Shown here: positions 6,281 through 59,600 of the stretch, one piece after another
How positions within the stretch are numbered: position 1 is the stretch's first letter
Layout of the letters: every line of letters begins with the position of its first letter
Assembly (NCBI RefSeq): GCF_006345805.1
Contig: NC_043007.1
Span: 31,620,001 to 31,684,000, forward strand
DNA length: 64,000 nucleotides
Source of the DNA: Octopus sinensis
Taxonomy: Eukaryota
Direction of reading: 5' to 3'
Program-made: the position numbers and the translations under genes
The notes under the pieces: model-generated
What the model saw: the letters and a program-made list of their open reading frames with translations, nothing else
The model's database searches: none
What the model was told of the DNA's origin: nothing

Positions 6281-6668
6281 CATCATCATCATCATCATCG
6301 TTTAACATCTGCTTTCCATGCTAGCATGGGTTGGACGATTTTGACTGAGGGCTGGCGAACCAGATGGCTGAACCAGGTTTCAATCTTGATCTGGCAGAGT
6401 TTCAACAGCTGGATGCCCTTCCTAATGCCAACCACTCCAAGATTGTAGTGGGTGCTTTTACGTGCCACCAGCACGGGGTCAGTCAGGCAGTACTGGTAAT
6501 GACCTTGCTCAAATCTTTTTACACATGCCACCGGCATAGGTGCCAGTAAGGTGACGCTGGTAACGACCACACTCGAATGGTGTCTTTTACGTACCACCGG
6601 CATGGAGGCCAGATAGCCACTCTGGCAACGATCACGCTCAGATGGTGCTCTTAATACCCTACAAGCCC
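6281..6668 (-). mobile_element. SINE-like family A copy (long form with internal subrepeats)
   Basis: (CAT)n, core, and repeated ttttacgtgccaccggcac units. Confidence 0.85.
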
Positions 6669-8592: not shown

Positions 8593-8728
8593 ATGACGGA
8601 GGTAGCGCAGATCCACACGGGGGTCCATTGGGAACCTGGGCAGGCCCCCCAATTGGTGGAAGAAGGTTTCGATAGCGGAAGTAATTCTTCCAAGCTGTTT
8701 GAGCGATCGAGGATCAAAGCTCTAGCAG
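8593..8728 (+). CDS. beta-Spec: beta-spectrin coding exon 1 (N-terminus, MTEVAQ...SRIKALA)
   Basis: Acceptor ttttag at 8577, ATG 8593, donor AG|gtaagt, phase 1. Confidence 0.93.
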
Positions 8729-11700: not shown

Positions 11701-12077
11701 GGGGAATGCAGAGGCCAGGAGGGAAAGTATGTTTGTAGGGTACAGGTAGAAAGTTATTGTTGGAAGATTTTATTAGTTTAGAGTGGGTGTTATTGTTTGG
11801 AGTTCAGTCAAGCACAGAAATGACATATATTTAATATACATGCATGTGTGTGTATGTCTGTATTTAATTATATATATATTTATTTTTTGCCCACAACGGG
11901 CTAAACATAGAGGGGACAAAAAAAGACAGGCAAACGGATTAAGTTGATTACATCGACCCCAGTGCGAAATTGGTACTTTATTTAATGACCTCGGCAGAAT
12001 TTGAACTCAGAACGTAACGGCAGACGAAATACCGCTAGGCATTTCGCCCAGCACGCTAACGTGTCTGCCAGCTTATA

Positions 12078-12108
<31 letters not shown>

Positions 12109-15100
12109 GCGCGCGCATGTATTTATATATCATCATCATCATTTAATGTCTGTTGTCCATACTGGCATGGGTTGGACGGTTTGACTGGGTTGGTAAACCA
12201 GAAGGCTGCATGAGATTCCAGTCGGATTTGGCATAGTTTTATACAACTGGATGCCATTCCTAATGCCAACCACTCCAAGAGTGTAATGGGTGCTTATACG
12301 TGCCACCAGCATGGGTGCCTTTTGTGTGACACTGGGGTGCATTTAAGTGCCACCGACTTGGGTGTCAGTTTGCATGACACCAGTACCTGCCATGACTGCG
12401 ATTATTATACACACACACACACAGTGTATGTGGGTGTGGAAGTGTGTATTTATATACATGTCAAATGGTGAAGTCATCATTTACGTCTCAACTGTGCTGA
12501 GTCTTACTTTTCTACAACCATTGACATTTGTTGGCATTTCTTGTCGAAAGTCCTGCACTAGTTCTGGTCTTATGAATTCGTGAGGAATAAAAGATATCTC
12601 TTGCTTGAAAAGGGGTTAAGTGTTAATGACAGGAAGAGCGTCCCAATGTAAAATCTTACCCCAGTTACCTCCCATCTAGGCTATGTAGTCTTGAGTTTCT
12701 TAATAAGAGCCAATGCATTGAACATCATTTTTCAACAGTAGGAATGTGTGGTGGATTGATTATTTATCAAACATGAAAAATTGATTTTTCTTTTTTTTTT
12801 CCTTTTCCATGCCACTGTACTAGTGAGGTTGCCAAGAAGCTTGTTAGTTTCTTGGTGACCTCAATTAGTGCAAAGTACCCAGTACACATAGTAAATTGGT
12901 TGGTCTATGTATGGAAGGGCATCCAGTTGTAGGAATCCTACCAAAGCTAAAACTGAAGCTTGACACAGCCCTGTAGCTTGCCAGATCTTACTGAACCACC
13001 AACCCTGTACTAGTATGGAAATCAGATGTTGAATCAGGATTTTTCACATGGTCACTGGTGTGACATAAACTTCTTAGTGAAATACTATTGGGAATTGCTA
13101 CTGGAGTAATGAAGTTCGTTCCTGAATATTTTGGGATAGCACCCACTAAACTCTCGGAGTGGTTGGCATTAGGAAGGGCATCCAGCTGTAGAAACTCTGC
13201 CAGATCAAGATTGGAGCCTGGTGCAGCCATCTGGTTTGCCAGCCCTCAGTCAAAATCGTCCTACCCATGCTAGCATGGAAAGCGGACATTAAATGATGAT
13301 GATGATGTTGCTAGCAATAATTTTAATCTCCCCCTCCCCCACTAACGTTCCCTATATTTGTGATGTTGAAGTTTAGCTGTTTTTACCTGCTAATTAAAAG
13401 TGTACCACCATAGTAACAGTAATCTTAGGTTTCATTAGACTTGATCATCCTTTTTATTATAATAATAATGAAATTATTGTATACAGTGCTCAGGTGGTCT
13501 CTACCTGTCTTTATCATTTCTTTATGTTGTCCATGTGTTGTTACTTAGTAAAAATAATTTGGTCGAAAATAAAAATATGAAAGATAACTGCAGAACCATG
13601 CTTGTTAAAAATTATATTAATGGTGCAAAATTTATTTCCCTTTTTTAGATGAGAGAGAGGCAGTGCAAAAAAAGACCTTTACAAAATGGGTTAATTCACA
13701 CCTTGCCCGGGTTGGCTGTCGCATAAGTGACTTGTATTTGGATTTACGAGATGGGAAGATGTTGATAAAATTGCTAGAAGTCCTATCTGGTGAGCGCCTG
13801 GTAAGTAAAACTGCTTCAATCTCATACGACTTATTTAAGATGGTTGTCAATGTTGTGGAAGGTGTGTAGTTGGCTCTGACATGAGCTTCAGTCATTTTTA
13901 TGCTATAGACAGAGACAGTTAAAAATTATTTTTGGAGCATCGGATTATATTTCAGAGAAATATTGTTTTGACAGAGCTATTAGCAACGATTGAAATGCTG
14001 AAGAATAAATATTTTGATGTACATGTTAACCTATGTTGAGGAATTTGATTATATTTTAAAGCTTAAAGAAAAGAATTAATAAAATGAATAAATGTATTTC
14101 GGGGAGAAAGATTTTATAATAAAAGAAGGTAGCCAAATTTAAAACCTCGGACCTTGTGGGTTTCACATATTGTGATTGCTTTTCTTTATGGATTTTCAAG
14201 TGTCAGAGACTTCATAGATTAGAAATGGTTTGAATGATTGGACTTCTGACCATTATCTTATACCTCCAGCCAAATAATTCTACTTGGAAATAAGTATCAT
14301 GCTAATTGATCTCCTCTGGCAATCTAAGTAAAGATCTAAATTTGCAGAACTATCCAGCTTTTGTTCATTGAGAAAAAAATTAAAATTTTCATTTGTCACG
14401 GGTGTAGGATACATACAAGAAGACATTTTCAGGTCTCTGAATATTCCTTACCATTTCATCTGATTTTAAAGCCTGATATATTTGACCTTGGGTTTTTTGT
14501 TTTTTTTTTATCTATTCCTGTCTCTACTGCCATTTATTCTTTCTCATATTTATGTATATACATTGTATATTCACTACATATGCATCCTTATGATGCCTAG
14601 CTTTATTTTTCTTCAGTTAATTTCCACTTTGTCCTTCATATCTTGCATAACCAACACATCACACTCAGTCCATTCCATTGCTGTTACTATAATTCCACAA
14701 CACACCTTCGTCACTTATTTTACACAGGCAAAACTCGTTTGGATCAAAAACTAAATTGCTCCTCTTGTCTTGCAACAAAACACTTTGTATTCTGTGCTCT
14801 GCTTCCTCTCATCATGAACAGTAACTGTTTTAGCACTTACGATGATGATGATTGATGAGATAGTATTGTACTGGTCTTTACTATTGATTACACAGATTAA
14901 TGTAATTACACTGAAAAAGCGATTAATTTTTTTTCGTAAATAGATTGATCATAGTATATTTTGGCACTTGCATCTTGTCTCTTTGTGCCATAATCTCCTT
15001 TCTGACCACTAGTTTCTTTTTTAAATCTTGTGTAGCTTGGCTTTTTCTTCTTTTTTTGTTTCTGGAGAGATTAGGGTTGGTCACAACCAAGTAAATATTG

Positions 15101-41600: not shown

Positions 41601-44600
41601 ATAGTTTTATGCCCTTTAGGTAAGAAACCAACCGTATTGTTCTGTAGAATCATCCAGTTGTGATATTTTTAAAAGAAACATTATAGTTCACATAATTGTG
41701 ATACGAGAAGCAAATACTGTGTGATTAGTAAGCCATATTTATTGCTGATAGTACACTGCATATTGTTATAGTGTGGTATTAAGTATTATATTGTATTTAG
41801 TTTACTGTTCATCTTACTTTTGTACCTATGGTAAACTTGGTGGATGATTCGTTCACATTTAAGAAAAGTATAAGACCCATTTAATTGAAGAACTGGCTTG
41901 AAAATCTGTAAACTTCATTCTAGTAAATTTGTGGTTTGATCATTGAAAAAGTAATTAATACTAAAGCTACTCTGTATGGTAGTAGGTATTGCTGTGTGAG
42001 CTTACAAGTGAATTTGGTAGATGGAAACCGTAAGAAGCCTCTTGTGCTCATGTGTAAATTTGCATGAATGGTCACATCCCACAGCTTCACTTGTCGCTGC
42101 ACCTATCGCTTTAGGACTAGTTACTCTATGCTTTCTTTCAAAGGTGTGGAATTAAAAAATCCCTTGCTTGAAAAACCTGTAACAATTTGCAATAGAAAGA
42201 GCAAATTGCCATAAGATCCTGTCTCGGATATTTCCCCACCCATCCTATACTAGAAATGGATAAATGAACGTTAATCCAACAAATGGGTGTTTATCTTTAA
42301 AGAAAGGTCAAAAGTCCAAAAAAATTATAATCTGAAATAAATAAAAAAGTGGGTATTTTAAATTCCTCTTGATAATTGACCCTGTTCCTTCCATTGCCAT
42401 TTTTATTATTCTGCTCCCATTCAGCAGTAGTAAAGCAATTATTGTGCTCTCTCTTTATCATTAACAATCATAATTAACTGTTACATTATTGGTTTATATA
42501 TCATTACTCATGAGTAATTTTCTATTTAAATTAGTTGTGTTTCTTCATTTGATAGTTAAGAATTCTAAGGAATGCACTTCACAAAAAAAAAACTTTAGCA
42601 TTCTGCTTTAAGCATCAATCGCTGCCAATTTGGTAGCCAGCTGTTCTTTAATAACCCTTGCCTGAAGTCTTACATGTTTTGTAATTATTACAGCCTCGTT
42701 TTCATTACCAAGTCTTGGAGTCTTTGATAAGCGTTTCATTCCATCACTTGTTTTATTCATAGCATGTATTCTGGTTAAGTATTCTGTATTCATTATGGGG
42801 CGTCAAAGAAAAAGCAAGATTGGCAAGGAATTTAAGGTATTTTTACCTGTATGAGTTACAATTTTTATAGATTTATTTCATCTCACTGGATTTTGTTTTT
42901 TTAACCGATTGCACACCTTTTTTTGTTTTTTTAATGATAGATGTTCCTCAGGGATGCCAAACAAGCTGAGGTACTCCTCAACCAACAAGAGAACTTCCTA
43001 TCAAAAGAAGAAGTACCTGTAAGTATTATTCTTACCTTTAATTCTAAATGGTTTCTATTTCTCTTTTTTTACTTTTTACACACATAGTTCCTCCCATTGT
43101 GTCCACAGCTATTATAGTTTCTCTCATTGTGTATCGGGCTGTATGTGTGTGTGTGTATGGCAACCGATGGAATTTACATTTTTATGGAATTGGATTTGGA
43201 AACTCGATGACAATTTGTGTTCTTGAAAAAAAAGAGAAAAGGCACCCAATTTCTTAATTGACATCAATTTTGATTTTGTTGAAGGCATACGATTAAGATA
43301 TACAAAATAGATTCAAAAACTTAAATTTTAAAATGTTGGCTGCGAAACGAATAACAAATGGATAGATACATCGTGTTTATAGACACATTATTAATTATTA
43401 ATTGTGCAGTCACCAGTCTATGGTAGTAAATGTCTGGAATACAAGTCTATAATGCAGATTGGTAGTTGAACTTGTTTACTTAGTGTCTGTATTTATTTGT
43501 TTTTCTTTTCTTTTTCTATTTTTGTTTTTACTCGAATGCCTGAAGTGGGGGGTGGGTGACACAGTTAGATTGTTCAACTCTTTCAGCAAGTGATTTCAAA
43601 AGACTCCTTTATGGACTTTAAATGTTTAGGTTCAGAAATATGTTAGAAGCAACCCAAATAATTCTTCATACATTTGTAGCTCTACGAGAATTATCGCATT
43701 AAAATATTAATATATTCTACAAAAAATAAATTATGAAATAAGTTTTTAGATTATATTGTATGTAGGTTTTGGGGTGGGTGGATTGCTGCAAGTGGTTGTG
43801 GGATAATATCATGTATTTATTAGTAAAATGACCTACTGTAATTTCAGTTTAGTTACCTCAAGCTGTCCCTAGGTATTTTATATTCTGTCCTGTTCTTCTC
43901 CTATTGCCGTCTACAAACTAGTGGCGTTAGAAGCAGTCAATAGTAATAATATTCTAATAATATCTTCAAGAGCCTAAATTGAAATGTGAGTACATTGTTT
44001 CAAACTGATTTGTACCATTTCCATCTCGTCAACATAAAACTAATGAAAATTCCATGCTGAGAATTCTAAAAGTAATTTGCTGTGTGTAACCTTAATTATA
44101 TTTTAGTTTACTGTGCTCACACTGCTGTTGAATATCACTTGAACTAGTGTAGTTTTTTTTTCCTTTTTCTTTTTTCTTTTACTCTATTGAAAATTGCACA
44201 ACTCTTGTTCAATTTTGTTTTTATGTACATGAAAGATTATGACAATTTTTCTACCATATATTTTTGTTTTTGTTTATATCCTAGTTTTATTTTCACACTG
44301 GCTAAAATGATTACACTTTAATGCTTTCATTAAACAGCTTTAGACATTATGAACAGATTTTTGTTTTCATTTTTAAAGAATTTTTTCTTTATCTTATTAA
44401 AGACAAAATGTGATGGAACCAGTAGAGCACTGAACTAAATGCTTTGTGGTATTTAATAACATGTCTCTACTGTCTCCCGCTAGTGGAGAGTTGTGACCTT
44501 GTGCCTTATGTTAAAAACTTTAAACAAAATATCTCGATAACTTAAAAACAGCACAGGTTATCTTGAAAGTTTTATTATAGTTTATATGAATTCTCAGTTC

Positions 44601-47600
44601 TACAAATCTGAGAATATAGTGATTCCATGTAACGAAACACTACTGTTCTGTTGGTCACATTGCCAATACAAAGATGGCTGGTTCACCAAAATTCTTCATG
44701 ATTTGTACTGGGACAGTCACATACCATTGTCTCTATGTATGTTGTATCCATTTAACCATGACATTGTCCAACAGTATTGTCACTACACAGAACAATCTGA
44801 CTTAATTATGTATTAACATTTTAAAATATCTATTAAATTGTTGATAGTTTTATAAGATGTTGATTTATAGACTAAATATTTATGTGTCCATTTGTGTATC
44901 AATATTTTCTTTGCCCACCTGTATAATTTGTAGGACATATACATACATACATATATATATATGCTTTTATCTTTTCTGATATTTTAAAACAAATGATTGC
45001 ATTGTCGTTGGAGCTCTGATTCAAATTACGAATCATCCTCGTTCCAATTTTAAGACCTTATCTCAGCCCTGCACAAGTAATAGAATTAAAATGTTATTTC
45101 TAAAATTATATTAGCCAGTATGATATATTTAAGGTTTTCAAACTGTTTTATTGCTTGTTTAGTAAGTCCTACTTGGTGCTACCACTTTATTTGCTGTCTC
45201 TGCAGTAAGTCAGTGTATAACTAGTGTCTTTTGTTACACAGAGTGCCATTGGACTTGACAAGCAGGTAACTTGGTGTCTGCTGCTGCTGTGTTAATGGAT
45301 GTAGATAGCATGCTAACTTAGCTTGGTGCCACACAAAAAAAAAATACCATTCAGTTGGCTTGCCATTGTTTTTCCTTCTATAGAAAATTACTGAATAATT
45401 TACGGAATCTATCAATTTGCTTTATTTCCAGAATATTTAGGTAAAACTTAATCTGTTAAATACAATGTAAAACTAGAATTTTAAATTTCATTAATTAAAA
45501 AAAAATGGTTGTAGCTCTCAAAAACATTAAAAAAACTAATGGTTTGGCTTTATTTCTTCATAAAAATATATTTTTAAATGTGTTATGGTCATAAAAAAAA
45601 GAAGTTATGCTGCTTGCTTTATTTTGGAAAATAGTCTTTAAATTTAAACCAGTTTTCTGTTGACACTATAAAACGACACCAAATAATTCATTTAGCAGAA
45701 ATATCTAATGTAATTTTTGAATTATTAGTGTTAATTAATAAGCCCCATAGAAGAAGCATTGGACAATTAAGTAACCCTCTGTCCATATCAGTAAATGAAA
45801 ATTAGTTTTTGTTATTTTTATATATAATATATTTGTTCAGATATATTTCATTACTAAACTAAAAAAATATAACCATAAAATATTATAAAATCATTCTTTT
45901 TTCAATCCAATACTTTTAGTTTGGGATTGAAAAGAGAATGATTTTATAATATTTAAAATTTTATTCACAAAAATGGGGGAAAACCCTATTTTTAAAATTT
46001 TTAAATGTACCCATCTCCTTTGTAAGAATCTGTCCAGAAATTAGGATCATAGAAATCATAAACTAGTGCTATCTCTGTAGCTATGCTTCATATATTTAAA
46101 TTAAAAATTCCAAGCAGCAATTTTCATTGCATCCAAATTCCTCAGACCACTTGATATTAAAAAGCAAAACAACAGTTTAGCATATTTTCCCAAGCTTTCT
46201 AGTTTGCAGTAAAAGCAATGGCACCAGACTAGGAATGGCTCAATAACATGTTGTCATTGTTGAGATGTCAAATGTTCATTGTTTTGTTGTTCTAAATTTT
46301 TATTTTATTTTTTTTTCTCTTTAGTTTTATATATTATATATACTGAGTGTGTTTATATATATTATATATTATATATATATACATATATATATATATATAC
46401 TGAGTGTGTTGATATCTGCTCACAGTTCTTCATTTTTTTTTTTTCCTCTTCTATCTCTTTCAGATTTTTCTTATGCACATTGAGTATATTGTCTTCAACC
46501 TATTCAGATAAATATGCAATTTTGCTAAAATCTAGACCAATATTATTAATTTTTCTTCGTTTCTAAACCATTCTACTTCAGTACTTCTTTCTTGAAGTGT
46601 TCTAACTTTGATTCACTCATTTTCATATTCCTTGGCATTTTGCTCTATAAGTGTGAATTGGTGTGTTGTTGGAATTACTTAATACCATTCTTTCAGTGGG
46701 ATTTTTTGTTCTCTTTTACTCATGTCAGTATTAACAGAATTTTGGTGTTGGATCATATGTCACTAAATAGTCTTAAAGTTTAAGAAAATTATTAACTATT
46801 AATTATAGATTTAAAACAGATAAGGATCTGGTATTAATTATAATAATTTACAAAAGAATACAAAATGTTGTTTATATGTTCAGTTTTTGCTTTAATCTCT
46901 AACCTTTATTTCCCCCCACCCCCTCTAAATCATTGTTTCACAAGTTCTAGATCTAAGTTGTGAAATCAAGTTTAGCAGAATTAACTTGTCTTATTGTTCC
47001 TGTGACTAATAAATGTCCTGCCAATTCTATTATGCTAAGAGAAATTAATTGATGGATAAAAACTAACAAAAATTGTTTTAAATTCCTTTTGGGTCTAAAA
47101 GAGAGAGAAAAAAAAAACAAACAAAAAACATTCAGTTTGTGTTTCTTAAATTTTGTTATTGAAACAATTGTTCTTCATTCTTTTCTTTCTTTCTTTTTTC
47201 TGCTCCAATTTCCTCTTTCTCTAAAACTCTTTAATTGCTTCGGTTACTCTTCAAACTAAATTTGTTTCTCATACCTCCTACATGTATAGACTTTATAACT
47301 GGTGGTTGTGTTACGGTTCTTCCAGTTCAGTTTCTCTCATTAAACTTTGAATACTAATGTTACAAGTGTATTCACTAACTTTATAATTTGTTCTTCCTAA
47401 AAGTGTTCTGCTTGGATGAAAGGAGAATTATCTTGTTCATCTTCTTGCCAACTTCTCTCTATTAATTGCTATAAAACTATTCTTCACTGACAATATCTTC
47501 GTTCTGTTGCTATCAGTAATTATTACAGCTAAACTTTGTGTGTAAATTGTATGCATTTAAAACAAACGTTATATTAATTTCTGGTTTCTCAAGTCTTCTC

Positions 47601-50600
47601 AAGCTCCTGCCATCTTCTATGGCATGTCCTGTCCTCATCTCTATATTCCTGGCACATATATTTCTGCAGTGTGTTGTAATCTGTGCCTAGCATTAAAAAA
47701 ACTGTTTCAATTTGTTCTCTGTTAGCTCAATATTGTTTTTCTTTTTTTTTTTTTATTGAACATTGTTGTTGTGCTTTTCAGCAAACTTGTACTGTGTGAT
47801 GGGTGTGGACTTGTTTTTTTTTTTTTTCCTTTTTTTTTTTTTTTTTGTGTTGCTGTTCCGGAAAGGTAATTGGGAGGGTCATAATTGCTTGTGTGTAATT
47901 TTAAAAGTTATTCTTTCCAATAGTTTATTGAAATAATTAATCATTAAAGGGGAAGAAAAGATCCTTTTTTTTTTTTTTTTTTTTTGTGCCTCATATGTAA
48001 ATAATCTGAGGATTTTGGCAAAAGGATTGCCATTATTATTTTGAAATAAACTTCATGCATGAGAGAGAATGAAATTGTCTTTTTGTAGTTACGTATTTTA
48101 GATGAATTTGCTACTCTCTAGCTTTCATATAACCTCCTTTCTATACCTCACTAATCCTGTATAATGACACTTAATCTTGTCCATTTGGTTAATTATGCTG
48201 TCGAGAAAGATTTAGTCAGTATTTTCACATTTATGATTAGAACTATTCTATACTTCAATCACTGCTTGGTTTTTTAATGACTTTGTGGAGTATTGTATAG
48301 AAACCACTTTCCAGTGACTTGATTGCTTAGCACAAGATTAGAATGATCTTTATTATATAATCCAATTGTTTGATTATAAAATACGATGATTCAAGTCAAA
48401 ATTTTTATTTCAAATCTTTGCAAAACTGTTGCTGAAGGAACTCATTTCCAGCTTGATGACTTGAAAAGTCCTGGTTAAATTGCTAAGGAGTTGCTAATAC
48501 TCTTAAAATAGCAAATTGGTTCTTATTGTCTCTGACAGGAGTCCTATTTACCTCCAGGGTACTTCATTCTAGTTTCACTGGTTATGTTTTAGATTTTTGG
48601 TCATTTGCTTTATTAGCATCTCAATATTTTATATAATGTATAATTTGGATTATTAGTGGTAACGGCACTAATTAAGAATGGTTTCGGAGGCAACTGTGAA
48701 AAGGAGATTAATTTTCACCTCATTGTGACTTTTTTTTAAGAATTAAAGTTTCTTTGATTTTTAAATTAGCTTCTTGTAACAGACATTAATAATTTGATTT
48801 TTAAATGATTGAATAGTTAAACATTTTTTTTCTCATTTTTTCCCCCCTCCTTTTCTAGTGGTAGTAACATTCTTCAGGAAATAAACTCTATTTGCATGAA
48901 GGGGGTGGGAATCTTTCTTTCTGACAGCTTTATTGATGTTTGATGGTTTTTATTAAAACATGTTTTTATATTGTACTTGATTCCTACATGTTCTTAGATC
49001 TCTATTTCTTTTAATATTAATTCAATTAAAATATCTTTAATCTTAGACAATAATGATATCCTATGTGCACATAACTGAACTACAATTCTTACCTCTTGTA
49101 AGAATTTCTTTTGGTGCTTACAAGTAAAAGAAAAGAAAAATATGTCAAGTCTATTTGTCTAATATAGAGCCATAGCTTTTTCATTTAAAATTCCTGTCAC
49201 CACTTAAATGTTAACATCTGTTTTTAAGATTAAAAAAAAAATCCAAGCAGATCAAGTTGCCAATTTTCTCCTTCGGCTGGCGGCTAATTAATACTGCTGC
49301 TGGTTAAAACCCAGTTCAAACTGCCTTGCTTCTAAACATGGTTAATTATTTCCTTAAATCTGGATGAAATTAAAAATGAATTTTAACACCTCATTCCCAT
49401 GAGCTGTTAAAATTTACTTTTATCAATATTTTGGTTCTTATATGGCATACATTTACATATTTTATTTAAAAAAAGAAAAAAAATTTGTTAGAAAATTCAT
49501 GTTATTAAATTAACAATAAGTATTATTAAAACTGTTCCAGAACCAGTTTTAATGTTGTATACTGCAATTACAATTGTTCTAAATACTACTGCTACTACTA
49601 ATAATAATAGTAATTAAGATGTTGATAAATACTAGTTTAATCTGTTTGACTTGTTAGTGTTGGCTAATGTTTTTTTTTTTTATGCTTTTTTTTTTTTCGT
49701 TTTTCCTTACTTATTATAACCAACTTTTTTCCTTCAGAACTCGTTGGAAGCTGCTGAAAATATCATTAAAAAACATGAAGCATTTATCACCACAATGGAT
49801 GCAAATGATGAGAAAATTAACAACGTCTTGCAATTTGGACAAAGACTCATCGAAGACAACAACCATGCTGCTGACAAAATCAGCAAAAAAGCAGAAAACA
49901 TCAACGAAAGGTAAGGACAACATCTGTGAGGTGAAATTGCAAAATTCTGCAGACCACATGAGTAGTCAGCATTGGTCGAAATTAGGTTATGGGAGGCCCA
50001 AGGGAATTTCTCTTGCTCTCTCTCCCCCCAGCTTCCCTTATGGAAAGATCATGCACTTTATGTGATCGAATATGGTATTTACAGTTGTTAAGGCGGCGAG
50101 CTGGCAGAATCGTTAGTACGTCAGGCGAAATACTTAGCGGTATTTCGTCTGTCGCTATGTTCTGAGTTCAAATTCCGCCATGGTCAACTTTGCCTTTCAT
50201 CCCTTCGGGGTCGATTAAAGAAGTACCAGTTACGCACTGGGGTCGATATAATCGACTTAATCCGCTTGTCTGTCCTTGTTTGTCCTCTCTGGGTTTAGCC
50301 CCTCATGGGTAGTAAAGAAATAGGTATTTACAGTTGTTATTTAGACCCAGGTTAGTCCTGCTTAAGCTGACCTGCAATAAATGACTTTTTGAGTTAGTCT
50401 TTTAGTCCTTTGCTTGTTTCAGTCATTTGATTGTGGCCATGCTGGAGCACCGCATTTAGTCAAGCAAATCGACCCCAGGACTTATTGTTTGTAAGCCTAG
50501 TACATATTCTATCGGTTTCTTTTGCCGAACCGCTAAGTTATGGGGACGTAAACACACCAGCATCGGTTGTCAAACGATGTTGGGGGACTGGCACTTTAAA

Positions 50601-53600
50601 AGCACCCACTACATTCTCGGAGTGGTTGGCATTAGGAAGGGCATCCGGCTGTAGAAACTCTACCAGATCAGATTGGAGTCTGGTTCGCCAGTCCTCAGTC
50701 AAATCGTCCAACCCATGCTAGCATGGAAAGCAGACGTTAAACGATGATGATGAAGTCAGTCAGCTTTCTCCAATTACTATTTCCAGCAATTTCAGTTCAG
50801 GGTTTTATTAAAAGATGCTTACCCAAGGTCCTGCACCTGGGATCCAAAACCCCACACAGCCATATTTGTGTGTTCATTGATTTAAATGTATACTGTTGTT
50901 GTTTAGCCCCAGGTCAGCTTTTTTCGAGCAGATCTGTTTATGAAAAGCATTGAAACCACAAACCACCTTCCTGTAATTTAAAGACAAAAAATCTTCTTGC
51001 CATTTACAGGCGTAATGCAAACAGGCAGCGTGCATATGAACAACTGGAACGCCTTAAAGACCAGAGAATGCTACAACAGTTCTTCCAAGACTGTGAAGAA
51101 GTAAATATTATTTAATATTTTTCCTTTGAATTTCGTATTTTCCCTCGTATCGTTTGGGAGAGTTTTAATATACAAAATACTTTATTTTCTTTTTAGTTAC
51201 GAGACTGGCTTCAAGATAAAATGTCAGCTGCTCAAGATGAGACTTATCGTGATGCTAAAAACCTGCACAGCAAATATATGCGACATCAAGCATTTGAATC
51301 TGAAATTGCAGCTAATAAAGATCGTCTTTTGAAACTTCGTGAGGTACATTTTTTTCTTTTTTCCTTTTTTTTTGTTTCTTCTCTATCTTGTCCAATTAAA
51401 GTGCAATTTTGTCATATAAACCCTAATTAATTTGATAGGTGCAGACATGGCTGTGTGGTTGAGAAGTTTGCTTCCTAAACATATGGTCTTGGGTTCAGTT
51501 CCACTGCACAGCACTTTTTTTTCCCCCCTCTTCATTTTGAAACTTTCAAACCAAAGTTCTAGGAAATATACAACATAAAAAAGAAAAAGTTCGTGTTTTG
51601 TGTGTAAGAGAAATGATTATAAAATTATAGACAATAGTTGAGGTAAAAGCTTTTAGTGCTGAGGGTAAACAAGATGGGCTGTGAAGACTTGAAAGATGTC
51701 TGTTAAATATGTGGGGTTTATAGATCAGTGACTTAATTGAATATTTTCCCCATTAGAAAAACGGGTTTCCAATTATTAAAAAACTAAAATGTTTTCTCTT
51801 TTAGGCTGGTGAAGGTTTGTTGAAAGATAAACCCGAAGCTGCTGAGCAGGTTGGTCCCGTTCTTGAGGGTCTCAGCAATCAATGGGAAGAGCTCGAGAAC
51901 ACCACGAAGGACAAGGGTGAGCGGTTGTTTGATGCCAATCGCTCGGTCCTCTATGAACAGAGCTGTGATGACATTGATGGTTGGATTCAACAGCTGGAAT
52001 CCCAAGTTGTTACTGAAGAATTTGGTAGAGATTTAACCACTGTCAATATTCAAATGCAGAGGCAAAATGTAAGTATTGTTTAATTTAATCATGTTAATTA
52101 ATATGTTCAATTAGAAATTCTTTTCTTTTTTTTTTCTTCTTGCTTATTCATATCTTTAATTTGTGTTTCTGTTAAATAGCAATTGGAAAGCCAGATGAAG
52201 TGTAAAGAGAACCAAGTGCAAGAGCTTGATAAACAAGCTAATTACCTGAAAACTATGGATCCTAATAAGGAGGCTGAAATAGAAGCTCGCAAAGTGGCGG
52301 TTGCTGAGCGGTAAGCCATCAGTTTTTTTGTAACTTTTGAAAAATTCTGTTATCAGAATGCTAATTAGTAATTCATAAATAAACACACATCATCATCATC
52401 ATGTATTCAATAGTAATTTACTTGGATTGTTTTATGTTGCAGGTTCATGAAAATTCAGGCGCCTTTGTTAGTACGACGATCTCAACTTGAGAGAGTCAAA
52501 CGAATTCATCAGTTTCAGCGTGATATTGAAGATGAAAAAATGTGGGTTGAAGAAAAGATGCCCCTGGCAACCTCTGGCAACTATGGCAACAGCCTTCTTA
52601 GTGTTCAGTTACTAATGAAGAAAACACACGTAAGTAGTTCATCACCACCATTTAATGTCTGTTTCTCATGATAGTTTGACCAGCGGCACCAGGCTCCGGT
52701 TGTCTGTTTTGGCAGGGTTTCTATGGCTGGATGCCCTTCTTCGTAACACCAACCACTTTACAAAGTGTACTGGCTGCTTTTTACTTGGCACCAGCATTGT
52801 TACTTTAACCCTGGTACTAGAACTGTTGCTTTATACTTGGCACCATCACCCATGAGCTTCCAAGACAAGGATCTCTCCTCGATTAAAACTTTCCTAAAAC
52901 TAAAAGCATGGTTCAAAATGTGTTAACTGAGAGCTGCTTTCACTTTATAGCAGAAGTGGGGAAAGTTTTTGCCAAATAACCAAATTAGCTTGTAAAGTCA
53001 CAATATTTTATACTTGATTTTAGCTGAAAAAACTGGGTTGTGATTTCTACATGGGAAAGCTTAAACAATGAAGGGAAAAAAATCACGTACCAAGATTTAA
53101 CACAAAATTTGAGGTGCAACTTGTACATGGATAAATACGCCCATTATTATATTTGGTTGTTAGGAACCTTATTTTAAAAATTGTACTTAAAAAGAAATTA
53201 TTTTAATACTTTCTTCTCATTCATTCTCTTGTGTTTCTCTGTGCATTAGATTTGCAGATATTGTGAAGAAGTGTGTTTATTATGTTGTGTATTAAGGACA
53301 CAGGCAAGGCTGTGTGGTTAAGAAGTTTGCTTCTCAAAACATAGCTTTGGGTTCAGTCCCACTGCCCCGGGCAGATCAAAGCCTTGTAAATGGATTTGGC
53401 TGATGGGAATATAAAGTAGCCCATTGTGTGTGTGTCTCTACTTCTCTTGACCTTGCATGAAAGTTGTAAATGAGTGCCACTGTTATACAAGCAGTGTCAT
53501 TAATATCCAATATTGTATGAAAATGTGTCTGACTATGGAGAGAAAATTTTACTTTGCTAGGAAACCTGTGAGGTTTTGCAACAAGAAATACACCTGATCA

Positions 53601-56600
53601 TAGAAAATCTACCTCAGTAAACTCCATCCATCCCATACAAACATGGGAAGGTGGACATAAAAATAATGACAACAATTTGAAAATAATAATGATTTGCTAG
53701 TTGGTCTATCTGATAATCAGTTTTAAAGAATAATTTTGATGGGACCCAATAGTGTAGACTAAATTTAACAGTAGTTGTAAAATGTCATCTGGAATAGTGA
53801 GGGTCTTCTCTTCCCAATTCAGTGCAATTACATATTTTATATGCATTTTCCATTTTGTTTCCATTACTTTAGTCATTGCAAACAGAAATTGAAAACCACG
53901 AACCCCGTATTGATTCTGTTATTGCTGTTGGCCAAGAATTGGTTAATGAACAACATCCACAAGCTGACGAATTCCAACAACACATTGATGACCTTAGCAC
54001 TAAGTGGAAAACTCTAAAGGATGCTGTGGACGCAAGGAAAGCTCGCCTACAGCTCTCAGATATTGCCCAACAGGTATGGGAGAACCATTGGTAACATTTT
54101 ATTAAAATGTGATTTGCTGCTTTTTGCTTTTAATTTTTTATATTTTTTAAGAATTTTTTTGAGCCCTTTGCCTGACCGGAGCATCATCATCATCGTTTAA
54201 TGTCCGCTTTCCATGCTAGCATGGGTTGGACTATTTTGACTGAGGACTGGCGAACCAGACTCCAATCTGATCTGGCAGATTTTCTACAGCTGGATGCCCT
54301 TCCTAACGCCAACCACTCCTAGCGTGTAGTGGGTGCTTTTTACGTGCCACCAGCACAGGGGCCAGTCAGGCGGTACTGGCAACAACCTCGCTCGAATCTT
54401 TTTTGCTATGCCACCGGCACAGGTGCCAGTAAGGCGACATTGGTAACGATCACACTCGAATGGTGCCCTTTTACGTGCCATGGCACGGGGGCCAGTCAGG
54501 CAGTACTGGCAATGTGACATGCAGGACCTATTTCCCTGGTAACCATGCATCATATATGATATGCTTTTCTAACTTTTCCAACTGACAAAGTAACTCGGGA
54601 CTCTAGAAAGGAAAGTTTTATTTTCCTTTGAACATATCAAACAAGGGCTAACTAAAATTTTTGAAAACAAGCTTCTGCGTTTGAGACGAAACTTATGAAA
54701 ATGCTTTGGACAGGCAAAAGGGTTTTTTTTTTTCTCTTAATTTAAAAAAAAAAAAAACTGCTTTTTCAAATAATTTGTGTATTATTGGAAGCCTCTGTTG
54801 TCTTTTTTTAGTACTATCAAGATACTTCTGAGGCAGAATCTTGGATGAGTGAACAAGAACTTTACATGATGGGTGAGGAACGGGCCAAAGATGAAATTGG
54901 TGCACAGAATATGCTTAAGAAACACCAGAATCTCGAATCCGCTGTTGAGGACTATGCAGATGTTGTCCGCCAGTTGGGTGAGAGAAGCAGAAATTTGATT
55001 GAACAAGAACACCCAGAAAGGTGAGATTATCTCTTTGGTTATTTTTTTCATTCTAAGGTAAAAATAAGGAAAATATTTACAACATAGAAGACATATTAGC
55101 TGTTCAAAAAATACACAAAGACCGTTGATTTCCCTTAAAAGTTTCTTTGGTGTCAAGATATTTTGTCACACCAACTGCCACCTGGTGACTGATACAGTTC
55201 CATTTGCATTCAAAGGATGTTTGGCTGCCACTTTTCAATTTCTTCAATTTTGTCCCAATTGATTTCAAATTTGGTGTACTGATGTAGATTTGTACACTCA
55301 TTATTGACATGAAATTCATTTTTGCCATGAATCAATAAAGAGTTAACAGCTTTTAAAGTTTGTTAATTTTGAGTTATTTTAGCCAATCAAAAGTCACCGA
55401 CATATAGGTGCCTGTTTCCATAGTAACAATCAAAGTGTTGACATCAAACACGTTTACAAGAAACAAAAAACGTGTTTGAAATATTTCATTTGTTTAGTGT
55501 CTTTTCTGCTCTTAAAACTACAGAATTTGCTGTTTACTCTTTTTCTTCCCTCATTAAATGCATATTGAATGCTTAAAACTACAAAAGCATGTGTTTACAC
55601 GTTTTTTGGGGTGTCATTTTCCAAATCCTGTTTTCTGGCTGGGTAAAAATGATCAAACTTTAAACCTCTAATTTTTTAAAAACCTTTTTCTGGAACGAGT
55701 GAATTCTCTCTTGAGATTCAGCATGAAAAATTACATCGATACACCAAATTTTGAAAATTTTCACTCTAAATTTTAACATTTCAAAAAGTGCTGCCAAACT
55801 GAAAAAGTTCCATTCGCACTGTGTCAATGACCAGATGGGGCAACAAAAGGTTTGACACCCAATAAATTTGAGTGAAATTGTGTGTTTTTGAATGGCTTGG
55901 CTACAATTGTTTTAATTTCAATGCATGGTCACAGATCTAATCACTTACTTGGCAAGCACACCTATGAAGCATAGATATTAGTTTTAATTTATCCTTGGTT
56001 TACTTTTGTCAAATAAATGCAAATAAATATTTAAAAAAATTTTTTTGCTGCCTCTGTATTTATCGTATTTATTTCATTTTATTTATTAGTGAACAAATTG
56101 CTGTTCGCCAAGCACAAGTGGACAAGCTCTATGCTGGTCTGAAAGATTTGGCCCAAGAACGTCGTGGCAAGCTTGAAGAGGTGCTGAAATTATATATGCT
56201 AAGTAGAGAAATTGAAGACTTATTACAATGGATTGCAGAAAGAGAAGTTGTAGCAAAATCTCAAGAACTTGGTCAAGAATACGAGCATGTAACTGTAAGT
56301 TGGGTTTGACCGTTTTAATCTGATTGAAAATTATAACCATTTTGTAGGAATTAATATATTTTTCATAATGGACCCCAACTGAGATGCTTTTATAGTTATT
56401 TAAATATTGAGCCTTATTTTGTGACTACATAAATACATGTCTACATGGTTGTATGGTTACAAAGTTCACATCACAACCATGTAATTTGGATTATGTGGTA
56501 TTGTGGGTGGGCAAGTGTCTTCTACCATAAACTGGAGCTGACAAATGATTTGTGAATAGAGATATTGGATGGAAATCAAAAAGATGTGTTTGTGTGTATG

Positions 56601-59600
56601 TGGAAATATCAATCCAGCATGTTGTCCTTAGTCCTGGCTGAGCAAAAAGACTGTGACATCGGATTACTTTCTCCGACATCGGATTACTTTCTCCGACACC
56701 GGATTACTTTCTCCGACACCAGATTACTTTCTCCAGTGAGGTAATTCAGCAGCCATCTAGGACCAGTTGGAGGAAAAATTACCTTACTTGAAAAACAAAG
56801 CTGGCAACAAAAAGACCATCAGGCTGTAGAAAATCTTTCTCAAGTTGCATCTAATTCATGTTCATGCCAGCATTGGAAAATGGTGACAAGAGAAAACTTT
56901 ACTGGTTTTTCATCTGAAATGTGGAATTAATATTTATTTTAATGTCCTTTGAAACAAAGTAGATTTCTTACCATTGTTCTTATTCTGTGAAAAATAGCCA
57001 TAAATAGTGATTTGATATTTTCAATTTGTCTTGAAAGATCACACATAATTGAGTTTTTATTTATTTATTTTTTTTTTCCTTTTTCTTTTACAATCTTATC
57101 AGACTCTTAAAGAAAGATTTAAAGAATTTGCTAGAGACACTGAAAACTTTGGACAAGATCGTGTGGCCTCAGCAAATGAAATCTGTGATAGTTTGATTGT
57201 AGCTGAGCACTCTGATGCTCCAATTATTGCTCAATGGAAAGATAATTTGAACGAAGCCTGGACCGATTTGCTAGAGTTAATAGACACCCGCACACAGATG
57301 TTGCAAGCTTCATGGGAATTATGGAAGTTTAACCACGATTGCAAAGAAACTCTGGAAAGAATCCAAGTAAGTTTGAAAGACTTTTCTACTGGAGTATTGA
57401 GTTGGTAAAGTTATTGACTGCAAGTCATTTCCTGCATTAAACATGTTTGAGAAATTTCAAAATTTGGTTAATGAGCAATTTACTTAAAAAAAACCCAAAG
57501 TGATTTGTTTCATAACAAATTTCATAATCTTATTTCCCATATTCTAAATTTACATAATTTGTAATATTTAAAAAATTTTTATTTTTATCTAATTGCATTT
57601 TCTATTACAGGAAAAGAAGAATTACATACCTGAAGAAGTTGGAAGAGATGCTCAAAGTGTTGCTGTTCTTCAAAGAAAGAATGCTAACTTTGAACACGAT
57701 TTAGTTACTCTTGGAAATCAAGTAAGTTTCTTTGGCTGCTTCGGTTTGACTTTACTATTTTCAGCTGCCATCATCATCATCATCAAATGTCTGTGTTCCA
57801 TGATAACATGAGTGGGACAGTTGGTACCACAAGAGCCGGCCAGGCTGAAGCCTGAACCGGACTTCTGTTGTATCTTGTAAATAGCTTGATTTTCATTGCA
57901 CTAAATATTTAGCACCAGTTCAAAGAAGCAGCCATGTTCCCTAAATATATCAGTCTTTGGTGTAACATGCACTTGACTTTGCTTGCATTTTAGAGGTTGC
58001 ATCTTGTCAGAAACTGATGCATTTTCAAATCAAACCATTGACTAAATTATTAAACATTCCATTGTAAATATAACTAATTAATTATGTAGTATCAGTAACA
58101 TGAAGAGAATTACTCAACACCGTTTTCCTACGGAGACCAGAAAAGATTGTTTGCCAAGTGTTGTTTATAATTTTAGGATGCTTCTTTGAAATAGGAAATT
58201 TCCTCGTGGCTCTTGTTTTTCTGTTTGATTAATTTATATTTTGAAATATATTTTTCAAGGTTCATTTAATTCAAGAGGAATCAGCTTGCCTTCAAATTGG
58301 ATATGCCGGAGAGAAGGCGCGAGAGATTCAGAATTGGGAATCTGATGTGGTTAATGCCTGGCGTAATTTGCAATTAATGGTTGAGAGCCGACGAATGAGA
58401 CTTGCTGATGCCAGTGACCTTTATAGATTCTTTAATATGGTCAGAGACCTGATGTTATGGATTGATGACATCAGGCGGCAAATGAGCACTCAAGAAAAAC
58501 CAAGGTAAGTCGGTCGCTTCCATCATAAAACAGGACCAGATTTAAGGCAGCCGTTGAGGAAAATGAAATTTTCAGCTCTTTTTATCAAATATATTGCTTT
58601 AGCAAGTCTTCCATGCTGCAATAGATACTTCTACATCCTCTAAAAGTTCTAAAAAGGCTGGATAGCAATTTGCATGTGGTAAAAATTCCTAGAAAGAAAC
58701 TGACTCAATCCTTTTTTTGACAGTTTGTTTTACCAGTTTTTCCATTTCTTTTGAGGGTACGACTTTTCACGATTGTGTATACAGTTTGCATCGGTCACTG
58801 ATATCCTCCAGATGTTCTTGTAGTTGATACATAGCATTCATAGAGCTGGAGAAAACCTTTGGCAGTTTGCTACAGTCTGGTGGCTGCTAAGAAAACTAGG
58901 TCTACCTGAATGAATAAGTGAGAGCCATGTAAACCATACACAAAAATGTCAGCAAAGAGTCCAGCAAAGAATTTAGCCCATTGAGGTTCTGTTCTCAGCC
59001 ACATCCTGTTTATTGTAGCTCTTCAGGACATAACAAATTTAAGATCAGTTCATCATCATCATCATTTAACATCCGTTTTCCATGCTAGCATGGGTTGGAC
59101 GGTGATTGTTAAATAGGAATTCTTGTGTCTTGATGGCCTAGTTTTTGGAACAGAATCTCAGTAGTTTCAACAAATTCCAAACATGGACTCAAGCCATAGA
59201 CTTAAGAAGCCTCAAAGTAAATTTTGCGAAGACAAGAGTTTTAACAGGAAACAGGACTTTACCATCATGTGTTTCTGTTCAAAAGGAAAAGTTTAGGATT
59301 CACTAGCAGACAAATGGATAACTTTGTATGTAGCAGGATACATAGTAAGAGTTCTCACAAAATAAATTCTTTCAAATGATTGGAAGCCTTCTTGAAAATA
59401 GTTTACCTTGGTGATTTAATTAGCAGTGGAGGAGGGTGGTCTGAAAGTATGACAACCAGAATAGGAATGGAAGGAGTTCGGAATGTTATTACTTTGGCTG
59501 ACAACAGTGATTCTTGTTTCTCAATGAAAGGCAAATTGTATGATGGTTGTTTAGAAAGTGTGATGTTGCATGATAAACAAATGTGGGCATTGAACATGGG

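What the first reader, a model, noticed from the sequence alone, without database searches (positions are those of the whole stretch)
45242..45265. Hidden in-frame 24-nt microexon (SAIGLDKQ) in beta-spectrin repeat 9
Seen: a polypyrimidine acceptor (tgtcttttgttacacAG), 24 stop-free nt in the phase 0/0 frame of exons 22 and 23, and donor CAG|GTAACT (GTAACT is also used by exons 4 and 18). Downstream lie (CTG)4 at 45278-45289 and GCATG at 45308-45312. Known: YGCY clusters bind MBNL and (U)GCAUG binds RBFOX, and both usually promote inclusion from downstream. The insertion point EEVP|NSLE maps to the helix A-B loop of repeat 9, where an insert is tolerable. Inference: a tissue-regulated, possibly neural or muscle, microexon that would explain this long intron.
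Basis: partly seen in the sequence, partly recalled or inferred. Interest (0 to 1): 0.75.

Follow-up and report, generated by a model that had tools for sequence, protein, structure and literature searches.

The report
Conserved beta-spectrin microexon, already annotated
The 24-base stretch is a real, alternatively used mini-exon of the octopus beta-spectrin gene. It adds eight amino acids to a loop of the protein, is already in public gene models, and has counterparts in other molluscs, brachiopods, ribbon worms and amphioxus.

Summary
The 24 nt at 45242-45265 (SAIGLDKQ) are a genuine cassette microexon, not a chance ORF.

- **Annotation:** The RefSeq protein XP_029642320.1 (Octopus sinensis beta-spectrin X1) maps exactly onto the window as 40 exons. 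One of those exons is 45242-45265.
- **Alternative use:** The exon is included in O. sinensis X1/X2, two O. bimaculoides models and an Argonauta hians model. It is skipped in an O. vulgaris model, an older O. bimaculoides model and three mRNA-length transcript contigs.
- **Octopod conservation:** The 24 nt are 100% identical in O. bimaculoides and Argonauta. They sit in a ~260-nt conserved island inside an intron that mostly does not align.
- **Wider conservation:** A 21-27-nt cassette lies in the same phase-0 intron in oyster, Aplysia, Lingula, Lineus and Branchiostoma. Protein models add scallops and other gastropods. Plus and minus isoforms are both annotated in several of these species.
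- **Protein position:** The insert lies in the A-B loop of repeat 9.
- **Regulation:** The downstream GCAUG is conserved in octopods and recurs at +37 to +51 in Lingula and Lineus, giving moderate support for Rbfox-type control. The CUG cluster is octopod-specific. Tissue specificity could not be tested.

The exon is not "hidden", because it is in public annotation. I found no paper describing it.

The parts
42941..43018 (+). It encodes [26 protein letters not shown], helix A of spectrin repeat 9, and has donor CCT|gtaagt.
   Evidence: Exact mapping of XP_029642320.1.
45129..45241 (+). Conserved upstream intronic flank. It holds UGC at 45192-45194 and 45201-45203 with UCUCU between them, and CTTGGTG at 45172-45178. 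A branch-point-like uauaAcu has its A at 45220 (-22). The short pyrimidine tract plus AG acceptor is tgtcttttgttacacag.
   Evidence: alignment; 99% identity to O. bimaculoides and 86% to Argonauta over -113..-1, rising to 95% over -60..-1. Motif positions were read.
45242..45265 (+). 24-nt cassette microexon, phase 0/0, encoding SAIGLDKQ.
   Evidence: it is an exon of XP_029642320.1; 24/24 nt identical in O. bimaculoides (L002 34635-34658) and Argonauta hians (L001 20853-20876); best of 137 pseudo-exon candidates; present or absent in different models and transcripts.
45266..45271 (+). 5' splice site GTAACT (CAG|GTAACT).
   Evidence: 10.2 bits, above the mean of the gene's real donors. ..CAG|GTAA is shared by the orthologous cassettes in Aplysia, Lingula, Lineus and Magallana; amphioxus has CAG|GTAT.
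45278..45289 (+). (CTG)4 YGCY cluster, a candidate MBNL-type site or a microsatellite.
   Evidence: in Argonauta it is a longer (CCG)4(CTG)4 tract; 6 YGCY in +1..+100, and no sampled window in the locus reaches that density. The cluster is absent in Aplysia, Lingula, Lineus and Magallana.
45308..45312 (+). GCATG at +43, a candidate Rbfox-type intronic splicing enhancer.
   Evidence: invariant block TGTAGATAGCATGCTAAC in all three octopods. GCATG at +37 in Lingula and +42 in Lineus.
45360..45383 (+). Conserved pyrimidine-rich, 3'ss-like element ttgccattgtttttccttctatag. Octopod conservation ends just after it. Its role is unknown; it could be a PTB/U2AF-type site or a decoy acceptor.
   Evidence: alignment: identical in Argonauta.
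49738..49910 (+). It encodes [16 protein letters not shown]..., the start of helix B of repeat 9.

Best explanation
Window 45242-45265 is a genuine, evolutionarily old, alternatively spliced cassette microexon of the conventional beta-spectrin gene. The species is Octopus sinensis/vulgaris.

When the exon is included, eight residues (SAIGLDKQ) are inserted between ...KEEVP and NSLE.... This lengthens the loop between helices A and B of spectrin repeat 9. When it is skipped, the protein has the short loop found in arthropod, nematode, echinoderm and vertebrate-like beta-spectrins.

Shown:
- the exon is used in annotated models;
- plus and minus forms both exist;
- exon and flanks are under strong purifying selection in octopods;
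- homologous cassettes exist in other phyla.

Inferred mechanism: the exon combines a strong donor with a below-average acceptor. Its inclusion is therefore set by conserved intronic elements within about 120 nt on each side. The best-supported of these is the downstream GCAUG at +43, read by an Rbfox-family protein as a downstream enhancer. The octopod-specific CUG/CCG tract at +13 is a possible second input. Tissue-restricted inclusion in neurons or muscle is a reasonable expectation but is not demonstrated.

The protein-level consequence is also inferred. The conserved consensus S/T-S/T-[IVLM]-G-x-L-D-K/R-Q suggests a specific contact or loop geometry rather than a mere spacer.

My sub-probabilities:
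- real alternative microexon, 0.95;
- homologous across Lophotrochozoa, 0.9;
- Rbfox-type control, about 0.5;
- neural or muscle enrichment, about 0.5.

The overall confidence given (0.85) refers to the core claim, a real, conserved, alternatively spliced microexon in the repeat-9 A-B loop.
For: **Annotation and mapping**
- XP_029642320.1 maps exactly, with 45242-45265 as a separate exon.
- SAIGLDKQ is present in O. sinensis X1/X2, O. bimaculoides XP_014781448.1 and XP_052827461.1, and Argonauta hians GAB1601256.1.
- it is absent from O. vulgaris CAI9730732.1, O. bimaculoides A0A0L8GFI1 and the transcript contigs P0129, P0003 and P0130. Those contigs are 7.2-8.0 kb and encode 2,183-2,430 aa, so they cannot contain introns.
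- the O. vulgaris model equals O. sinensis X1 minus this exon and one other cassette.

**Octopod conservation**
- the exon is 100% identical and the -60..-1 flank 95% identical in Argonauta. The neighbouring coding exons are 89-91% identical, and most of the intron does not align.
- best of 137 candidate pseudo-exons.

**Other phyla**
- separate 21-27-nt cassettes lie in the same phase-0 intron in Aplysia, Magallana, Lingula, Lineus and Branchiostoma. All end ...CAG|GT.
- plus and minus isoforms are annotated in oysters, scallops, Lineus and Branchiostoma.
- blastn of the octopus island hits only the microexons in the Lingula and Lineus loci.

**Regulation and structure**
- GCATG lies within +60 in 3 of 6 independent lineages (P about 3e-3 from locus-specific frequencies).
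- the site lies in the A-B loop of the second repeat aligned to PDB 1s35.
Against: - I obtained no direct junction reads or tissue-resolved expression. Inclusion in Octopus rests on gene models (RefSeq Gnomon and a GenBank annotation), whose RNA support I could not inspect.
- The short-fragment protein search found no octopus peptide spanning both junctions.
- GCAUG is absent downstream in Aplysia and Magallana. The 60-nt window used for the test was chosen after seeing the data.
- The CUG cluster is lineage-specific and sits in a length-variable microsatellite.
- The amphioxus insert (RRSGMDQ) shares only G-[LM]-D-...-Q with the lophotrochozoan consensus, so it could be convergent.
- The starfish Asterias has the same intron but no comparable candidate exon.
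Confidence: 0.85

Rival explanations
1. It is a constitutive exon in Octopus. The models and contigs that lack it would then be annotation or assembly omissions of a very short exon.
For: Microexons are often missed by aligners and gene predictors. Both O. sinensis RefSeq isoforms and both O. bimaculoides RefSeq models include the exon.
Against: Three independent mRNA-length assembled transcripts (P0129, P0003, P0130) join EEVP directly to NSLE. De novo transcript assembly does not drop 24 nt from the middle of reads. Plus and minus isoforms are annotated side by side in oysters, scallops, Lineus and Branchiostoma.
Confidence: 0.05
2. It is a chance pseudo-exon that homology-guided gene prediction has propagated between databases, and it has no biological use.
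For: Gnomon can use protein similarity, and I could not inspect the RNA evidence behind the models.
Against: - The exon is 100% identical at the nucleotide level, and about 110-120 nt of flanking intron on each side aligns at 75-86% (95% over -60..-1), across Octopus and Argonauta, while the rest of the intron has diverged beyond alignment.
- It is the unique top-scoring candidate in the intron.
- Orthologous cassettes with canonical splice sites exist in four phyla.
- A transcript contig from an unnamed species (P0014, 7.8 kb) contains an insert at the same site.
Confidence: 0.02
3. Inclusion is driven mainly by the SRRM (eMIC-domain) neural microexon machinery, as for most vertebrate and fly neuronal microexons, rather than by Rbfox.
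For: - The exon is at most 27 nt, frame-preserving, deeply conserved and has a strong 5' splice site.
- The upstream intron contains UGCUGUCUCUGC, that is UGC plus UCUC motifs, at -50..-39.
- The published cis-code is a UCUC...UGC enhancer near the 3' splice site (bioRxiv 10.1101/2024.09.17.613571; PMC8797185).
Against: - The UGC motifs lie upstream of the likely branch point (uauaAcu, A at -22), not between branch point and AG.
- Three AG dinucleotides (-38, -30, -19) separate them from the acceptor, so there is no long AG-exclusion zone.
- The UGC position is not shared among the other phyla: -52 in Lingula, -7 in Lineus, -48 in amphioxus, and none in Aplysia or Magallana.
Confidence: 0.2
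4. The strong conservation of exon and flanks reflects a double-stranded RNA structure, for example an ADAR editing substrate or a splice-site-masking stem, rather than protein-binding motifs.
For: - In the minimum-energy fold of 45180-45325, intron bases of about -62..-43 pair with the last 9 exon bases plus GUAACUUGGUG. That is about 17 bp covering the 5' splice site.
- From my own knowledge, cephalopod transcripts are heavily edited and sequence around editing sites is conserved.
Against: - Folding energies are not better than dinucleotide shuffles (z = +0.1 to +1.3).
- Both arms are invariant in the three octopods, so there is no covariation to test.
- No comparable pairing was apparent in the other phyla.
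Confidence: 0.1

Closest known systems
Deeply conserved, frame-preserving alternative microexons of bilaterians (for example the 6-nt APBB and 9-nt MADD neural microexons, bioRxiv 10.64898/2026.09.05.749416; vertebrate neuronal microexon programme, Irimia et al. 2014, as cited)
   Same: - The exon is at most 27 nt, symmetric (phase 0/0), and inserts a few residues into a surface loop of a structural or signalling protein.
- Exon and flanking introns are highly conserved.
- Included and skipped isoforms both exist.
- Conservation spans phyla.
   Different: - Tissue specificity is unknown here.
- The upstream motif architecture does not look like the SRRM3/4 (eMIC) code.
- The exon was not seen in the arthropod, nematode, echinoderm or vertebrate-like sequences I sampled. 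It would therefore fail that study's criteria for 'bilaterian-ancestral'.
- 'Spectrin' does not occur in that paper's text.
Rbfox-activated cassette exons with a downstream (U)GCAUG
   Same: GCAUG lies 43 nt downstream of the 5' splice site inside an invariant block in octopods. A similar position holds in a brachiopod and a nemertean. Downstream position means activation, by general knowledge of Rbfox RNA maps.
   Different: The octopus motif is AGCAUG, not UGCAUG. The motif is missing in Aplysia and oyster. No binding or dependence data exist.
Known alternative inserts in spectrins (alpha-II spectrin repeat inserts; C-terminal beta-spectrin isoforms), recalled from my own knowledge and not tested here
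   Same: Small alternatively spliced inserts modulate a spectrin chain without changing the repeat framework.
   Different: Those are in other chains or positions. The vertebrate-like beta-spectrin sequences sampled (PDB 1s35 and 8iah_M; representatives) show no insert at this A-B loop.

Membership tests
Alternatively spliced cassette microexon | Length of about 27 nt or less, a multiple of 3, with no stop codon in the reading frame set by the flanking exons | tested here: met
   24 nt, phase 0/0, SAIGLDKQ.
Alternatively spliced cassette microexon | Functional AG acceptor and GT donor of a quality comparable to real exons of the gene | tested here: met
   Donor 10.2 bits (real mean 9.3). Acceptor 7.4 bits (real mean 10.0, minimum 3.4). 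Best of 137 candidates.
Alternatively spliced cassette microexon | Both included and skipped mRNAs exist | tested here: met
   Included in five octopod models. Skipped in two models and three mRNA-length contigs. Both forms are also annotated in oysters, scallops, Lineus and Branchiostoma. I did not see read-level evidence.
Alternatively spliced cassette microexon | Evolutionary conservation of the exon and its proximal introns | tested here: met
   24/24 nt identical in O. bimaculoides and Argonauta; flank -60..-1 is 95% identical. Orthologous cassettes in four phyla.
Rbfox-regulated exon | (U)GCAUG within a few hundred nt downstream, conserved | tested here: met
   GCATG at +43 in Octopus, +51 in Argonauta, +37 in Lingula and +42 in Lineus. 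3 of 6 independent lineages have one within +60, P about 3e-3. Absent in Aplysia and Magallana.
Rbfox-regulated exon | Inclusion depends on Rbfox and is enriched in Rbfox-expressing tissues (neurons, muscle) | not testable with these tools
   No RNA-seq, CLIP or perturbation data were accessible.
MBNL-regulated exon | Cluster of YGCY motifs near the exon | tested here: met
   6 YGCY in +1..+100 in Octopus and 11 in Argonauta. Both are at or beyond the top 0.1% of windows in the locus.
MBNL-regulated exon | The YGCY cluster is conserved in orthologous exons of other lineages | tested here: not met
   0-2 YGCY in Aplysia, Lingula, Lineus and Magallana; 4 in amphioxus. The tract varies in length between octopods.
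SRRM3/4 (eMIC)-dependent neural microexon | UGC motif between branch point and AG; long BP-AG distance or AG-exclusion zone with UCUC-rich tract (bioRxiv 10.1101/2024.09.17.613571; PMC8797185) | tested here: not met
   The nearest UGC motifs are at -41 and -50, upstream of the likely branch point (-22). AG dinucleotides occur at -19, -30 and -38. The position is inconsistent in other phyla.
SRRM3/4 (eMIC)-dependent neural microexon | Neural-specific inclusion dependent on SRRM | not testable with these tools
   No expression data.
Conventional beta-spectrin, repeat 9 A-B loop | The host gene is a conventional beta-spectrin: two CH domains, spectrin repeats and a PH domain | tested here: met
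   Precomputed Pfam families PF00307, PF00435, PF00169 and PF15410 on P0001/P0121 relatives. The window's exons equal XP_029642320.1.
Conventional beta-spectrin, repeat 9 A-B loop | The insertion site lies between helix A and helix B of repeat 9 | tested here: met
   The fragment aligns to PDB 1s35_A (query 7-223 to chain 3-211) with the insert falling in the second repeat. That 1s35 holds repeats 8-9 is my own knowledge. The AF2 model has its non-helical, low-pLDDT segment at fragment residues 136-145, which is KEEVPSAIGL (mean pLDDT 70, single sequence).

The most novel reading that the evidence does not exclude
The cassette is a bilaterian-ancestral alternative microexon, that is, one exon inherited by lophotrochozoans and cephalochordates. 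It would have been retained in Mollusca, Brachiopoda, Nemertea and amphioxus and lost in ecdysozoans, echinoderms and vertebrates. An Rbfox-type GCAUG about 40 nt downstream would be part of its ancestral control. That would add a cytoskeletal gene to the very short list of alternative microexons traceable to the bilaterian ancestor; a 2026 preprint confidently lists only two.
Probability: 0.4. Interest if true: 0.6.

Novelty: new member of a known kind. Interest (0 to 1): 0.38.

Why it matters
The exon is already in RefSeq models, so this is not a discovery of unannotated coding sequence. It is, however, missing from at least two octopus annotations.

What may be worth a specialist's attention is the comparative picture. 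The same 7-9-residue insert sits in the same loop of beta-spectrin repeat 9 and is alternatively spliced in at least three lophotrochozoan phyla, and probably in amphioxus. In octopods the exon and its intronic flanks are more strongly conserved than the neighbouring coding exons.

Very few alternative microexons are known to be this old. Beta-spectrin is central to the axonal and sub-membrane skeleton. The conserved G-x-L-D-K-Q motif therefore marks a testable, isoform-specific function of repeat 9. I found no paper describing it.

Tried and rejected
- **Short-fragment protein search** (92-aa spliced peptide). I was looking for transcript fragments spanning both junctions. It returned only genomic read-through ORFs and nematode/arthropod fragments, with no octopus junction peptide.
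- **Failed locus look-ups.** P0002, P0039 and P0117 are not on record because only the longest isoform is indexed. For P0030 the gene range was too long. I solved this by using the X1 isoforms found.
- **RNA structure around the exon**. Energies were no better than shuffled sequence, so I dropped structure as the main explanation.
- **Rfam scan of the whole intron**. Only two sub-threshold miRNA-like hits at 45876-45956, unrelated to the exon.
- **Repeat or transposon origin**. The island is unique in the window.
- **Whole-library representative search**. It was dominated by multi-repeat proteins. It gave only one further insert-bearing fragment, P0341 (TTPGAAAR...), which has no taxon name. 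Vertebrate-like representatives show no insert, but isoforms are collapsed in that library.
- **Asterias rubens locus**. The homologous 481-nt intron is present, but none of its 6 in-frame candidates resembles the cassette.
- **Literature searches** for the peptide, and for microexon plus spectrin, octopus or cephalopod. No description of this exon was found.
Full report
**1. What is in the sequence**

The window carries a conventional beta-spectrin gene on the + strand. Its ATG exon is at 8593, the first CH-domain exon is at 13651, and coding exons continue to at least 63517.

- acceptor tgtcttttgttacacAG;
- 24 stop-free nt AGTGCCATTGGACTTGACAAGCAG at 45242-45265, encoding SAIGLDKQ;
- donor CAG|GTAACT;
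- (CTG)4 at 45278-45289;
- GCATG at 45308-45312.

The flanking exons end at 43018 (...KEEVP|gtaagt) and start at 49738 (cag|NSLEAAEN). Both boundaries are phase 0.

**2. Is it more than chance?**

I built donor and acceptor weight matrices from the gene's other 38 donors and 39 acceptors.
- The candidate's donor scores 10.2 bits, against a real mean of 9.3.
- Its acceptor scores 7.4 bits, against a real mean of 10.0. That is low-average: eight real acceptors score lower.
- Of the 137 in-frame, stop-free AG...GT intervals of 9-60 nt in the 6.7-kb intron, it has the highest combined score. It is also the only one that reaches its own two scores.

The surrounding 320 nt are unique in the window, so this is not a repeat.

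**3. It is an annotated exon**

I searched with the spliced protein, restricted to the 100 residues around the insert. The search returned Octopus bimaculoides XP_014781448.1, which contains ...[21 protein letters not shown]... exactly.

The members of that protein cluster split as follows.
- Insert present: O. sinensis X1 (XP_029642320.1) and X2 (XP_036363212.1), O. bimaculoides XP_052827461.1, and Argonauta hians GAB1601256.1.
- Insert absent: O. vulgaris CAI9730732.1, O. bimaculoides A0A0L8GFI1, and the assembled contigs P0129 (7,177 nt, 2,183 aa), P0003 (7,952 nt, 2,323 aa) and P0130 (7,986 nt, 2,430 aa).

Those contigs are too short to hold introns of a gene longer than 50 kb, so they are mRNAs.

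An exact-match spliced mapping places 2,126 consecutive residues (47-2172) of XP_029642320.1 on the window as 40 exons. One of them is 45242-45265; the first 46 residues lie in the ATG exon at 8593. The O. vulgaris model equals O. sinensis X1 minus this exon and one 85-aa C-terminal cassette.

So the window comes from the O. sinensis/vulgaris complex. The exon is real in public models, and both splice forms are on record. 'Hidden' holds only relative to some annotations.

**4. Conservation in octopods**

I fetched the O. bimaculoides locus (L002) and the Argonauta hians locus (L001).
- The 24 nt are identical in both.
- Against Argonauta the intron does not align except for a few islands. One island is 45129-45387, at 82% over 274 nt.
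- Identity to Argonauta is 95% for -60..-1 and 100% for the exon. It is 76% for +1..+60, where the losses are due to expansion of the CNG tract.
- The neighbouring coding exons are 89% and 91% identical.

Several elements are invariant in all three octopods:
- the block TGTAGATAGCATGCTAAC, which contains the GCAUG;
- three copies of CTTGGTG;
- a pyrimidine-rich, 3'ss-like element at 45360-45383.

The (CTG)4 tract is (CCG)4(CTG)4 in Argonauta.

**5. Conservation beyond cephalopods**

At the same position, between ...[ED][EDV]xP and [NTGH][ST][LV][EQ]..., isoforms from many species carry a 7-9-residue insert:

| Taxon | Insert |
|---|---|
| Oysters | SSLGLLDKQ |
| Scallops | STVGHLDKQ |
| Dreissena | TSLGLIDTK |
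| Potamilus | TTLGLLDKQ |
| Haliotis | STVGLVDRQ |
| Gigantopelta | STVGLIDRQ |
| Patella | SSVGFADKQ |
| Aplysia, Physella | IAPLDKQ |
| Lingula (brachiopod) | TTIGTLDKQ |
| Lineus (nemertean) | STMVGLDKQ |
| Tubulanus (nemertean) | STQVGRDKQ |
| Branchiostoma | RRSGMDQ |

Sibling isoforms without the insert are annotated in Ostrea, Crassostrea, Pecten, Argopecten, Lineus and Branchiostoma.

Genomic loci for Lingula, Aplysia, B. lanceolatum, Magallana gigas and Lineus show a separate 21-27-nt cassette in the homologous phase-0 intron in each case. Each cassette ends ...CAG|GT.

Blastn of the octopus island against the Lingula and Lineus loci hits only their microexons, at 82-84% over 37-44 nt.

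I saw no insert in three groups:
- the arthropod isoforms listed;
- nematode genomic fragments, which read straight through the junction with no intron;
- the echinoderm representatives.

The Asterias rubens genome has the intron (481 nt), but none of its six in-frame candidates resembles the cassette. Vertebrate-like sequences (PDB chains, representatives) also lack an insert. Isoforms are collapsed in those sources, so this is weak negative evidence.

**6. Position in the protein**

A 258-residue fragment around the site aligns to PDB 1s35_A over query 7-223 and chain 3-211. It also aligns to residues 1068-1317 of the beta chain in 8iah.

By my own knowledge, 1s35 is repeats 8-9 of erythroid beta-spectrin. 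The insert falls in the second of the two repeats, after helix A ([23 protein letters not shown]) and before helix B ([14 protein letters not shown]...).

A single-sequence AlphaFold model has mean pLDDT 70. Its only non-helical, low-confidence segment in that repeat is at fragment residues 136-145, which read KEEVPSAIGL.

**7. How inclusion is probably controlled**

*GCAUG (Rbfox-type).* GCATG lies at +43 in Octopus and +51 in Argonauta, inside an invariant block. It also lies at +37 in Lingula and +42 in Lineus. In amphioxus it is at +141 and +211, and it is absent downstream in Aplysia and Magallana. Using each locus's own GCATG frequency, the probability of finding one within +60 in at least 3 of 6 independent lineages is about 3e-3. 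I chose that window after seeing the data, so I treat this as moderate support for an Rbfox-type downstream enhancer.

*YGCY cluster (MBNL-type).* YGCY density downstream is extreme in octopods (6 and 11 per 100 nt, against a locus mean of about 1) and ordinary elsewhere. MBNL-type control is possible, but it would be lineage-specific.

*SRRM/eMIC code.* The published code places UGC between branch point and AG and has a long AG-free zone. It is not evident here. UGC sits at -41 and -50, upstream of a likely branch point at -22. Three AG dinucleotides lie between those motifs and the acceptor.

*RNA structure.* Predicted RNA structures are no more stable than shuffled sequence.

Tissue specificity could not be examined with these tools.

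**8. Literature**

Full-text searches found no description of this exon. The terms covered microexon with spectrin, octopus or cephalopod, and the insert peptides themselves.

A 2026 preprint on tissue-specific splicing across 20 bilaterians, octopus and amphioxus included, reports only two confidently bilaterian-ancestral neural microexons, in APBB and MADD. It does not mention spectrin.

**9. Verdict**

- The core interpretation, an in-frame alternative microexon in the repeat-9 A-B loop, is supported.
- The Rbfox idea gains some comparative support.
- The MBNL idea is plausible only for octopods.
- Neural or muscle specificity is untested.

The exon is already present in public gene models, so it is an ordinary kind of feature. 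Its conservation across Lophotrochozoa, and probably to amphioxus, is the only part that goes beyond what is on record. That is the basis for the moderate interest score.

Noticed in passing
window 46192-46757: A second conserved island in the same intron aligns to Argonauta L001 21581-22121 at 74.5% identity over 592 nt. Apart from a TA-rich microsatellite it is unique in the window. It has no Rfam match and no obvious exon. Its function is unknown.
   Followed up: partly
window 45360-45383: A pyrimidine-rich, acceptor-like element (ttgccattgtttttccttctatag) lies 95-118 nt downstream of the microexon donor and is identical in Argonauta. Conservation stops just after its AG (within four bases). 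An exon starting there would hit a stop within 5 codons. It could be a decoy 3' splice site or a PTB/U2AF-type site.
   Followed up: no
window 45172-45178, 45270-45276, 45322-45328: The heptamer CTTGGTG occurs three times around the microexon. One copy is upstream, one lies immediately after GTAA of the donor, and one follows the GCATG. All three are conserved in Argonauta. I recognised no known factor motif.
   Followed up: no
window 57611-57721 + 58260-58504 (protein P0125): GenBank MBK3499508.1 is named 'hypothetical protein JJB27_10640, partial [Campylobacter fetus subsp. venerealis]' and sits on a 328-nt contig. It is 100% identical to spliced Octopus beta-spectrin across an exon junction. 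This is octopus cDNA contamination in a bacterial assembly.
   Followed up: partly
P0121 residues 2172-2256; the cassette starts where the window mapping stops, at 63517: O. vulgaris CAI9730732.1 differs from O. sinensis X1 only by lacking the microexon and an 85-aa C-terminal cassette. O. sinensis X1 and X2 differ in their C-terminal/PH region. The gene therefore has further alternative regions.
   Followed up: no
window ~6300-6450, 12005-12180, 52634-52850, 54176-54320, 57694-57850: A dispersed intronic repeat gives stop-free translations such as HHHH(L/R)MS(V/A)FHASMGWT.... It recurs in several introns and upstream of the gene and is probably a SINE-like element.
   Followed up: no
window 45876-45956 (- strand): Weak, sub-threshold miRNA-precursor-like hairpin hits (mir-4650 at 25.5 bits against a gathering score of 80.7, and mir-2242). 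An inverted-repeat BLAST hit falls in the same region against O. bimaculoides. These are probably chance matches.
   Followed up: no
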